DNA from: Anolis carolinensis
Lineage: Eukaryota
Direction: 5' to 3'
DNA length: 64,000 nucleotides
Assembly: GCF_035594765.1 (NCBI RefSeq)
Contig: NC_085843.1
Location: 57,582,201-57,646,200 of the forward strand
Below are positions 45,607-47,653 of this stretch, one piece after another. Both the position numbers and the translations under genes were made by a program. Below the pieces are notes generated by a model. The model did not search any database and was not told the origin of the DNA. It saw only the letters and a list, made by a program, of their open reading frames with translations. How positions within the stretch are numbered: the first letter of the stretch is position 1; the number at the start of each line of letters is the position of its first letter.

Positions 45607-45908
45607 TGTCAGAACCCTGCTACTAGAGCCTGTATGTGGCTCTGAGTTTCAGGGTCACTGACATTGATAAGACACCTGCGTCTCAGGACTCGGAGAAGAA
45701 ACGGCTGCTGGACTTGGCGGGGAATTTGCGCGGGGTTTTACTGAGCGGGAAGAGACTTTTCAAATGAGGGGGAGGGTATATAAAGGATGGTTGGCCGGAG
45801 TCTCCCATTCTTGGCTTTTCTGATGTTTATGTTTCCTGCAGTAAAGCTTCTGGTGATATCACAGAGAGTCTCGTGTGTTCATTCAGGAGCGGCTGTGGTG
45901 AGCTGACA
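45607..45908 (+). repeat. 5' LTR
   Basis: TG...CA ends, TATATAAA at 45777-45784 and an AGTAAA poly(A)-like signal at 45840-45846. Confidence 0.95.
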
Positions 45909-45910
45909 TT

Positions 45911-45931
45911 AAGCCAAGAATGGGAGACTCC
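45911..45931 (+). promoter_or_regulatory. Self-priming primer-binding site (PBS)
   Basis: aagccaagaatgggagactcc is the exact reverse complement of LTR positions 45797-45817. It is not a TGG-starting tRNA PBS. Confidence 0.85.
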
Positions 45932-47305
45932 AGGGGAAACAACATACTCGCTGACGCTCTCTCTCGGATGCCTCAGCACGGGGGAGGAATTCAGGAATCT
46001 GAGGGGAGCCTTTTCCTAGATAAGCAATGGGGCCTGGCAGTACTGACTCGAGCACAAGCAGCCAAAGAAAACAAACGTACTGCCATTTCCACGGGGGGAG
46101 GAGAAATATGGGAGGAAGAGTTGAAGCGAGCATATGGAATGGACAAATGGTTACAAACGAACAAAGAACAGGGAGAACTGTGTGGGGATTTGGTGTTTGT
46201 TAATAAGAAATTGTATATTCCTGAATGTTTAAGACAAGAAATGTTAAGGAAATGCCATGATAACAAGGGTGCAGGTCATCTAGGCCCCACCAGGACTATT
46301 AAACTGTTGGCCAAACAATGCTGGTGGCCCGGAATGAGGAAAGACGCCAGGGGGTACGTCACGCAGTGTGAATTATGTGCAGAGGGCAAGACACCACCTG
46401 GGAAGCCCCAGGGGCTATTGCAAAAGGTGGTGGAGCCCATGAGGCCATGGGAATGCGTGGCAATGGATTTTGTAGGCGAACTACCCCCCAGCAGAGGCCA
46501 CAGATACATTTGGACAATATTGGACGTATTCTCAAAACAGGCACACTTTGTGGCCCTGCCAAAACTCCCCTCGGCTGAAAAGCTCGCTGATTTGTATGTG
46601 AAGCATGTATATCGCCTACATGGGTGCCCCGACAAAATAATTAGCGACCGGGGAGTCCAATTCACTGCAAAATTTTGGGGAAAATTCTTACAGCTGTTAG
46701 GAGCGGAAAGGAATCTGAGCTCGGCTTTTCATCCCGCGACCAACGGGGGGGTCGAACGTACCCAACAGACACTGTGCCAATTCTTGAGGATGTACACCAA
46801 TTATAGACAGGACGATTGGGCGGACCTTCTTCCGTTTGCTGAGATGGCTTTTAACGGGGCCGTACATTCGGCCACAGGTCGTGCCCCATTCGAAATAGTA
46901 TACGGACAGGAGGTGGCACCTTTCCCCAGGCTACCCGAGTGGAAGGAAGGAGAGGGCCAGACCGACAAGGAATGGCCGGCCAAAATTAAGCAAGGGTGGC
47001 AGACCGTGGTGGAGGCATTGAGGGAAACACAAAAGAAGTACAAGCTCTTTGCAGATCGTAGGCACCGAGAGGGGGACAAATTGGGCGAAGGAGATCTGGT
47101 TTGGCTGAGCACAAAAAACCTGAAATTGGGGTTCCCATCTAAGAAATTGGCTCCACGCTATATAGGGCCGTTCAGGGTAGCGAAAAGAATAAACGAAGTG
47201 ACCTATGAGCTGAGGCTACCCAAGGACCTAGGAAAGGTACACCCGGTATTCCATTGCAGCCTGTTAAAAAAGTATAAAGGAACTCTGGACAGCGGAGAAC
47301 AATAG
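45920..47305 (+). CDS. Uninterrupted Gypsy-type integrase ORF (461 aa) with a few RNase H C-terminal residues
   Basis: NILADALSR (RNase H end), HHCC zinc domain (CHD..GHLG..WWP..CELC), DDE core (MDFV, ISDRG, GGVER), GPY/F motif (RYIGPF) and HPVFH. No chromodomain. Confidence 0.92.
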   Translation: MGDSRGNNILADALSRMPQHGGGIQESEGSLFLDKQWGLAVLTRAQAAKENKRTAISTGGGEIWEEELKRAYGMDKWLQTNKEQGELCGDLVFVNKKLYIPECLRQEMLRKCHDNKGAGHLGPTRTIKLLAKQCWWPGMRKDARGYVTQCELCAEGKTPPGKPQGLLQKVVEPMRPWECVAMDFVGELPPSRGHRYIWTILDVFSKQAHFVALPKLPSAEKLADLYVKHVYRLHGCPDKIISDRGVQFTAKFWGKFLQLLGAERNLSSAFHPATNGGVERTQQTLCQFLRMYTNYRQDDWADLLPFAEMAFNGAVHSATGRAPFEIVYGQEVAPFPRLPEWKEGEGQTDKEWPAKIKQGWQTVVEALRETQKKYKLFADRRHREGDKLGEGDLVWLSTKNLKLGFPSKKLAPRYIGPFRVAKRINEVTYELRLPKDLGKVHPVFHCSLLKKYKGTLDSGEQ

Positions 47306-47351
47306 TTGTGTTTAATCTTTTCCTTCCAGGACGAAGGGGAGGAGGACGCCA

Positions 47352-47653
47352 TGTCAGAACCCTGCTACTAGAGCCTGTATGTGGCTCTGAGTTTCAGGGT
47401 CACTGACATTGATAAGACACCTGCGTCTCAGGACTCGGAGAAGAAACGGCTGCTGGACTTGGCGGGGAATTTGCGCGGGGTTTTACTGAGCGGGAAGAGA
47501 CTTTTCAAATGAGGGGGAGGGTATATAAAGGATGGTTGGCCGGAGTCTCCCATTCTTGGCTTTTCTGATGTTTATGTTTCCTGCAGTAAAGCTTCTGGTG
47601 ATATCACAGAGAGTCTCGTGTGTTCATTCAGGAGCGGCTGTGGTGAGCTGACA
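47352..47653 (+). repeat. 3' LTR
   Basis: Copy of 45607-45908. Confidence 0.95.

What the first reader, a model, noticed from the sequence alone, without database searches (positions are those of the whole stretch)
45607..47653. Very young 2-kb LTR element that encodes only an intact integrase
Seen: two apparently identical 302-bp LTRs, a perfect TSD, a PPT, and one open 461-aa ORF filling the whole interior. The ATG overlaps the PBS and is fused in frame to the last RNase H residues and a complete HHCC-DDE-GPY/F integrase. gag, protease and RT are absent. Established: non-autonomous LTR elements (TRIM/LARD) are normally non-coding, and partial ones more often keep gag. Inference: this is either a one-off deletion made during the last reverse-transcription round, or a propagating 'integrase-only' family that borrows Gag/RT from a partner element.
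Basis: partly seen in the sequence, partly recalled or inferred. Interest (0 to 1): 0.75.

Follow-up and report, generated by a model that had tools for sequence, protein, structure and literature searches.

The report
Young integrase-only deleted lizard retrotransposon
A very recent, still polymorphic insertion in a green-anole-like genome is a Gypsy-type jumping gene that has lost everything except its integrase, most likely through an accident of its own self-primed reverse transcription. It is a well-documented but fairly ordinary defective copy.

Summary
Window 45607-47653 is a 2047-bp LTR element with two identical 302-bp LTRs (TG..CA), a 6-bp target duplication (GCAGAA) and a purine tract. 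One 461-aa ORF fills 96% of the interior and is a complete Ty3/gypsy integrase behind about 16 RNase H tail residues. Best protein hits (96-99%) are Anolis carolinensis Gypsy integrases. Public contigs show a precise empty site in two individuals and filled-site contigs in a third, so the insertion is real, polymorphic and very young. Other contigs carry the same LTR end followed by a different leader, so full-length relatives exist. In those relatives the primer site is only 11 nt, complementary to the predicted RNA 5' end (Tf1/sushi-type self-priming). This copy has 10 extra nt after it, an inverted copy of the last 10 nt of U3, and they end exactly at the deletion breakpoint. My reading is that plus-strand strong-stop DNA snapped back on itself, was extended 10 nt, and then made an ectopic microhomology-guided strand transfer. 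That would keep only the 3'-proximal integrase. The scan noted the 21-nt match separately (s1-517387).

The parts
45601..45606 (+). left copy of the 6-bp target-site duplication GCAGAA
   Evidence: present once in the empty-site contigs
45607..45908 (+). 5' LTR, 302 bp, TG..CA
   Evidence: 100% identical to the 3' LTR
45777..45784 (+). TATA box (TATATAAA) in U3
   Evidence: lies 30 nt upstream of the self-primer segment
45797..45806 (+). last 10 nt of predicted U3 (GGAGTCTCCC), the source of the inverted 10-mer at the junction
   Evidence: inverted repeat I1, 21 nt, 100% complementary
45807..45817 (+). predicted first 11 nt of the RNA (R start), the self-primer complementary to the PBS
   Evidence: the RNA fold pairs the 5' end with the PBS, z -4.06. 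The start site itself is inferred, not mapped.
45840..45845 (+). AGTAAA, candidate polyadenylation signal in R
   Evidence: inference
45911..45921 (+). family-type 11-nt primer-binding site AAGCCAAGAAT, 2 nt after the LTR
   Evidence: contigs of other copies match up to 45921 and then diverge into a different leader (loose ends in X2 and X3)
45922..45931 (+). 10-nt inverted copy of the U3 end (GGGAGACTCC), a filler that is specific to this copy and ends at the deletion breakpoint
45929..45967 (+). retained tail of the RNase H coding region (up to ADALSR). TCC at 45929-45931 is shared with the filler as microhomology. There is a 2-nt gap after 45940 relative to full-length contigs.
   Evidence: loose ends before 45941 in X8 and before 45944 in X3
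45920..47305 (+). 461-aa ORF: 16 aa of junction and RNase H tail, then a complete integrase
46217..46393 (+). integrase zinc-binding H2C2 domain (aa 100-158)
   Evidence: Pfam PF17921, E 1.4e-20
46442..46735 (+). integrase catalytic core, rve (aa 175-272; D183, D243; E279 lies just after)
   Evidence: Pfam PF00665, E 8.7e-11
47090..47278 (+). C-terminal SH3 / GPY-F domain (aa 391-453), with no chromodomain after it
   Evidence: Pfam PF24626, E 1.7e-23
47333..47346 (+). polypurine tract
47352..47653 (+). 3' LTR
47654..47659 (+). right copy of the target-site duplication

Best explanation
This is a very recent insertion, still segregating in the population, of an internally deleted cDNA from an abundant and currently active self-priming Ty3/gypsy family of the green anole. 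The family primes reverse transcription as Tf1 does: the first 11 nt of its RNA pair with an 11-nt site placed 2 nt after the 5' LTR. I infer that the deletion arose during reverse transcription, most probably in the cycle that made this copy. Plus-strand strong-stop DNA ends in the 11-nt primer site, which is complementary to the start of R in the same molecule. It folded back on itself and was extended 10 nt into U3. With that 3' end it could not make the normal second strand transfer. Instead it paired through a 3-nt microhomology (TCC) with a nascent minus strand that had copied only the integrase and the RNase H tail. Mutual extension gave a complete two-LTR cDNA lacking leader, gag, protease, RT and most of RNase H, and the particle's own integrase inserted it. 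The integrase ORF is intact because the copy is young, not because it is needed. Its in-frame ATG is a by-product of the junction. The element is probably a one-off.
For: Shown: identical LTRs, TSD, PPT and ORF. A precise empty site appears in X1 (1098-nt contig, 0 mismatches) and X3. Filled-site contigs appear in X8, reaching 27 and 25 nt into the LTRs. Thousands of related contigs lie over the LTR and the integrase. Six A. carolinensis gene models are 94-99% identical, and one (P0125) is fused to an RT fragment. Other copies carry the same LTR end, TT and the 11-nt site, and then a different leader (loose ends behind 45921: 11 contigs in X2, 6 in X3). The 10 extra nt are therefore specific to this copy. 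They are a perfect inverted copy of 45797-45806, which has a chance of about 1e-6. Folded as single-stranded DNA, the canonical strong-stop product 45607-45921 pairs its 3'-terminal 11 nt with 45807-45817 in both the MFE and the centroid structure. This leaves U3 as template. With the extension the stem is 21 bp, z -6.3. Full-length contigs read straight through the RNase H tail into 45941 onward, which fixes the right breakpoint. From the literature: Tf1 uses an 11-nt self-primer (PMC7175516). Self-priming is typical of the Tf1/sushi group, including vertebrate members (PMC4600332 and PMC6317226). Microsimilarity-guided template switches in LTR-element particles give two-LTR chimeras (PMC5131818). 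Gypsy insertions in green anoles are numerous, mostly rare alleles, and recent (PMC7561263). Inferred: minus-strand synthesis copies the 3' end first, so a premature plus-strand transfer naturally keeps the integrase.
Against: No contig was shown that spans the internal junction, so the junction rests on the assembly alone. The copy number of the junction in the genome is unknown. The microhomology is only 3 nt. A 2-nt gap after 45940, relative to two variants of full-length contigs, is not explained by the model. That gap is what puts the ATG in frame. An RNA primer that started 10 nt upstream, or snap-back synthesis during chromosomal break repair, would leave the same 10-nt filler. The transcription start is predicted from TATA spacing, not mapped. 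X8 may be the individual that was assembled.
Confidence: 0.6

Rival explanations
1. This is a propagating non-autonomous lineage. The deletion was already in the template RNA, and the integrase-only element is transcribed from its LTR and mobilised in trans by Gag-Pol of the full-length partner. This copy would be one of several with the same breakpoint.
For: All known cis parts are kept: both LTRs, the 11-nt self-primer and PBS pair, the R-U5 structure and the PPT. Partners with the same LTR end exist. Alleles that mark this copy (45847 C, 47064 A) appear at low depth in X1 and X3, which lack this insertion, so a small sub-lineage exists elsewhere (table 3). Deleted chimeras can go through further cycles (PMC5131818).
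Against: No second copy is in the window. No protein with this N-terminus is in the collection. Any packaging signal in the leader or gag region is gone. A free integrase is not expected to enter particles, so selection would not keep the ORF. The marker alleles could equally belong to a full-length donor.
Confidence: 0.22
2. This is a post-integration deletion. A full-length element inserted here and later lost about 3-4 kb through chromosomal double-strand-break repair, with a templated snap-back insertion of the kind made by polymerase-theta end joining.
For: Templated inverted fillers with short microhomologies are a known repair signature (general knowledge). The 11-nt inverted repeat offers a snap-back site.
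Against: The filler starts exactly at the natural 3' end of plus-strand strong-stop DNA, which a random break would not explain. The insertion is polymorphic with no LTR differences, so little time was available for a multi-kb deletion. Deletions per reverse-transcription cycle are far more frequent than per-locus chromosomal deletions (general knowledge).
Confidence: 0.1
3. This is an assembly artefact: a full-length element collapsed internally during assembly.
For: The internal junction was not directly confirmed by an independent contig in the output that was shown.
Against: Both element-flank boundaries are supported by contigs of another run. A collapse would not create a 10-nt inverted U3 filler or leave a clean open frame.
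Confidence: 0.03
4. This is a domesticated host integrase gene of the GIN1 type, as the automatic names of the database hits suggest.
For: UniRef names the relatives 'Gypsy retrotransposon integrase-like protein 1'.
Against: It is flanked by identical LTRs and a TSD, is absent from two individuals, and belongs to a highly repeated family. The names are automatic.
Confidence: 0.01

Closest known systems
Tf1/sushi-group self-priming Ty3/gypsy retrotransposons (Tf1, Tj1, sushi-ichi)
   Same: There is no tRNA-type primer site. An 11-nt site just after the 5' LTR is complementary to the predicted first 11 nt of the RNA, the same length as in Tf1 (PMC7175516). The integrase has H2C2, rve and a Tf2-1-type SH3 domain. 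Relatives at 45-48% identity in snakes and frogs carry chromodomains.
   Different: The integrase of this anole family ends 8 aa after the SH3 domain, without a chromodomain. RT is absent here, so placement by phylogeny was not possible. This copy is defective.
Non-autonomous LTR retrotransposons (TRIM, LARD, TR-GAG)
   Same: It is short, has two LTRs with PBS and PPT, and lacks the full gag-pol, so any further movement would need a partner.
   Different: TRIM and LARD interiors are non-coding, and TR-GAG keeps gag. Here 96% of the interior is an intact integrase ORF. No evidence shows it to be a multi-copy family.
Deleted or chimeric cDNAs made by template switching inside retroviral or LTR-element particles (for example LTR-mediated retrocopies, PMC5131818)
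   Same: It is a two-LTR product with a TSD, has an internal breakpoint with short microsimilarity, and is young and polymorphic.
   Different: No host sequence was captured. The left breakpoint carries a 10-nt inverted copy of the element's own U3, placed exactly at the end of the primer site. This points to fold-back of strong-stop DNA, which the self-priming design makes possible.
Ty3 integrase (PDB 7Q5B, Ty3 Gag-Pol)
   Same: It is the best solved relative. Residues 80-453 align to Ty3 Gag-Pol 1071-1445, E 2.8e-45.
   Different: Here the integrase stands as a separate ORF and is not part of Gag-Pol.

Membership tests
LTR retrotransposon insertion | Two direct LTRs ending TG..CA, flanked by a target-site duplication | tested here: met
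   302-bp identical LTRs and a 6-bp GCAGAA duplication. The empty site has one GCAGAA.
LTR retrotransposon insertion | Primer-binding site after the 5' LTR and a polypurine tract before the 3' LTR | tested here: met
   PBS at 45911-45921, complementary to the LTR; PPT at 47333-47346.
Ty3/gypsy superfamily | Integrase with H2C2 zinc domain, DDE core and GPY/F-type C-terminal domain, most similar to Ty3/gypsy integrases | tested here: met
   Pfam PF17921, PF00665 and PF24626; best PDB match is Ty3 Gag-Pol; motifs intact.
Ty3/gypsy superfamily | Domain order PR-RT-RH-IN and RT phylogeny | not testable with these tools
   RT and PR are deleted in this copy. Only the RH tail followed by IN is seen, which fits the expected order.
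Tf1/sushi self-priming group | PBS complementary to the 5' end of the element's own RNA instead of a tRNA | tested here: met
   The 11-nt family PBS is complementary to 45807-45817, 30 nt after the TATA box. The RNA fold pairs the two. The start site is predicted, not mapped.
Tf1/sushi self-priming group | Chromodomain at the integrase C-terminus (chromovirus) | tested here: not met
   No PF00385 hit. The ORF and its 77%-identical relatives end right after the SH3 domain. More distant relatives have a chromodomain.
Tf1/sushi self-priming group | Phylogenetic placement with Tf1 and sushi-ichi | not tested
   No labelled reference sequences were available, so no tree was built.
TRIM / LARD | Non-coding interior | tested here: not met
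   A 461-aa intact integrase ORF fills 96% of the interior.
Propagating non-autonomous family | Two or more copies with the same internal breakpoint at different sites with different TSDs | not testable with these tools
No eukaryotic genome collection is searchable.
Domesticated integrase gene (GIN1-like) | Fixed single-copy host locus without LTRs | tested here: not met
   LTRs and a TSD are present, and the site is empty in X1 and X3.

The most novel reading that the evidence does not exclude
The element is one member of a propagating integrase-only lineage. Its LTR would drive expression of a free integrase that selection maintains, for example by acting in trans on, or interfering with, the full-length partner family. 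Such 3'-retaining derivatives would be generated recurrently by snap-back of strong-stop DNA in self-priming retrotransposons.
Probability: 0.1. Interest if true: 0.7.

Novelty: new member of a known kind. Interest (0 to 1): 0.35.

Why it matters
On its own this is one more defective copy of an active lizard Gypsy family. Its value is as a clean and datable specimen. It has zero LTR divergence, the empty allele is still present, and the junction appears to record how the deletion was made. Self-priming elements carry a built-in inverted repeat between the start of R and the primer site, so their plus-strand strong-stop DNA can prime on itself. If the 10-nt inverted U3 filler is a general signature, this replication strategy would have a specific cost, namely recurrent deletions that keep the 3' end. 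That idea can be tested by surveying deleted copies in anole and fish genomes. An LTR-driven intact integrase ORF is also a possible raw material for domestication.

Tried and rejected
For that reason no dN/dS and no junction count were possible. The exact ORF is not in the protein collection. The best hit (P0001, 96%) starts downstream of the junction, and P0125 joins an RT fragment to the integrase through a gene model, so neither carries this junction. The search of earlier findings by sequence and by relatives was blank. A self-BLAST of the window found no other copy of the LTR or the interior. A word search with the short N-terminus was considered and dropped. Junction-specific unitigs would be about 80 nt, too short to yield called proteins, and hits could not be assigned to loci. 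The large representative-protein search was not run, because the protein family is not in doubt. Levin 1996 (PMC231564) is not held, so the 11-nt rule is cited from PMC7175516. A tRNA-type PBS was rejected because the family site is only 11 nt and matches the element's own R start. Summed contig depths were not used as copy numbers, following the tool's warning. The many 'joints' near 45605 to 47663 with filler letters are paralogous copies of the repeat into which the element inserted, not alleles of this site.

Full report
**Observation**

The LTRs at 45607-45908 and 47352-47653 are 302 bp each, 100% identical, and end TG..CA. GCAGAA flanks both sides. The interior is 1443 bp. One ORF (45920-47305, 461 aa) fills 1386 bp of it. 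Pfam finds Integrase_H2C2, rve and SH3_Tf2-1 and nothing else. The HHCC motif, D183, D243, E279 and the GPF motif are all present, and ADALSR, the end of the RNase H domain, sits at residues 11-16. The best solved relative is the integrase part of Ty3 Gag-Pol (7Q5B, E 2.8e-45). A purine tract lies at 47333-47346.

**Host and family**

The closest proteins are Anolis carolinensis entries. P0001 is 96% identical, and the members of its 90% cluster are 94-99% identical. One of them (P0125) is 99.3% identical over the integrase and is joined by its gene model to an RT fragment. Two residues, V203 and H382, are private to this copy relative to all six models. Relatives at 77% identity (P0002, P0003) read through FFQGKHNVLADALSR into the same integrase and end at the same C-terminus. 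The lack of a chromodomain is therefore a family trait. More distant relatives in snakes and frogs do have one. Earlier notes of this scan also call the genome green anole.

**Read evidence**

All runs found are kept as contigs only.

- **Empty site.** In X1 a 1098-nt contig with no mismatches joins 45599 directly to 47653. In X3 a 502-nt contig does the same. These are precise empty sites with a single GCAGAA.
- **Filled site.** In X8 one contig runs from the unique left flank 27 nt into the 5' LTR. Another runs from 25 nt inside the 3' LTR into the right flank, also with no mismatches. Those lengths are what a 31-mer graph gives at a repeat edge, but they fall just under the tool's 31-letter bridging rule. 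X8 may also be the assembled animal.

The insertion is therefore real at its boundaries and polymorphic. This fits published data that green anoles carry tens of thousands of rare, recent Gypsy insertions (PMC7561263).

Thousands of contigs at 90% identity or more lie on the LTR and the integrase, so the family is abundant. I do not use the summed depths as copy numbers. The flanks themselves belong to another interspersed repeat.

**The junction**

Contigs from other copies match the LTR end, TT and AAGCCAAGAAT up to 45921. They then diverge into a different leader (11 contigs in X2, 6 in X3). The family primer site is thus 11 nt long. It is complementary to 45807-45817, which begins 30 nt after the TATA box at 45777. 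[quoted passage not shown] The mechanism is described for the Tf1/sushi group, including vertebrate elements. An RNA starting at 45807 folds with its 5' end on the primer site (z -4.06).

In this copy the complementarity runs 10 nt further (45922-45931), as a perfect inverted copy of the last 10 nt of U3 (45797-45806). This gives the 21-nt inverted repeat, which the scan also noted separately (s1-517387). Directly after it comes the RNase H tail. Full-length contigs read through that tail into 45941 onward (X8) or 45944 onward (X3). The filler and the tail share TCC at the join. Relative to both full-length variants this copy has a 2-nt gap after 45940. That gap is what places the ATG formed at the primer site in frame with the integrase. 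I cannot explain the gap.

**Mechanism (inferred)**

The canonical plus-strand strong-stop DNA of such an element is the LTR, TT and the 11-nt site. Folded as single-stranded DNA, that molecule (45607-45921) pairs its 3'-terminal 11 nt with the start of R in both the MFE and the centroid structure. This leaves U3 as template. Ten nt of extension would give exactly the observed filler, and the extended stem is 21 bp (z -6.3).

A 3' end of that kind cannot make the normal second strand transfer. Pairing through TCC with a nascent minus strand would let each strand copy the other. At that stage the minus strand would have copied only the 3'-proximal integrase and the RNase H tail. The result would be a two-LTR cDNA of the observed structure. 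Microsimilarity-guided switches that give two-LTR products are documented (PMC5131818).

The model also explains why the integrase is the part that survives: it is copied first. An RNA primer that began 10 nt upstream would give the same product. So would snap-back synthesis during chromosomal break repair. However, only the reverse-transcription models explain why the filler starts exactly at the natural end of strong-stop DNA. It gave me the snap-back lead, and I did not check that locus.

**One-off or family**

This could not be settled.

- **For a lineage.** All cis parts are kept. The alleles that mark this copy (45847 C, 47064 A) appear at low depth in X1 and X3, which lack the insertion. 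They could equally belong to a full-length donor.
- **Against a lineage that needs its ORF.** No protein with this N-terminus is on record. Integrase normally enters particles as part of Gag-Pol (general knowledge), so a free integrase would not help the element move.
- **Translation.** The ATG has A at -3 and G at +4, but two upstream ATGs in R open a short uORF.
- **Ascertainment.** Other deletion forms, gag-only and RT-less, are noted elsewhere in this genome. An integrase-only form among many is therefore not surprising.

**Limits**

- No eukaryotic genome collection can be searched.
- No contig spanning the internal junction was displayed.

**Verdict**

The element is a young, polymorphic, internally deleted Gypsy copy, and it is a new member of a known kind. 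The junction signature is the interesting part. Interest is 0.35.

Noticed in passing
window 8102-11341 (+): An intact 1079-aa ORF with an Exo_endo_phos endonuclease and an RVT_1 reverse transcriptase. It is an apparently intact non-LTR (RTE-like) retrotransposon.
   Followed up: partly
window 17351-20124 (+): A run of broken ORFs with weak RVT_thumb and Phage_integrase (tyrosine recombinase) hits. It looks like a decayed DIRS-like retroelement.
   Followed up: partly
window 56353-57107 (-): An ORF with a retroviral-type SH3 domain (PF25597, E 1.6e-17) next to a weak integrase-core match to P0002. This is a fragment of a different LTR element.
   Followed up: no
window about 45570-45606 and 47654-47810; also 48000-48200: The insertion target is itself an interspersed repeat. 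Many paralogous contigs without the insertion match both flanks with small filler differences, and depth is high. Most contigs lack 2 nt at 47744.
   Followed up: no
window 45823-45901 (and 47568-47646): Two ATGs in R open a 25-27-codon uORF that ends before the main ATG. It would precede gag in full-length copies as well.
   Followed up: no
window 45940/45941: There is a 2-nt gap relative to two variants of full-length contigs, and it puts the junction ATG in frame with the integrase. Its origin is unexplained.
   Followed up: partly
window 45375: A G/A difference on the empty-site haplotype of X3, an ordinary SNP in the unique flank.
   Followed up: no
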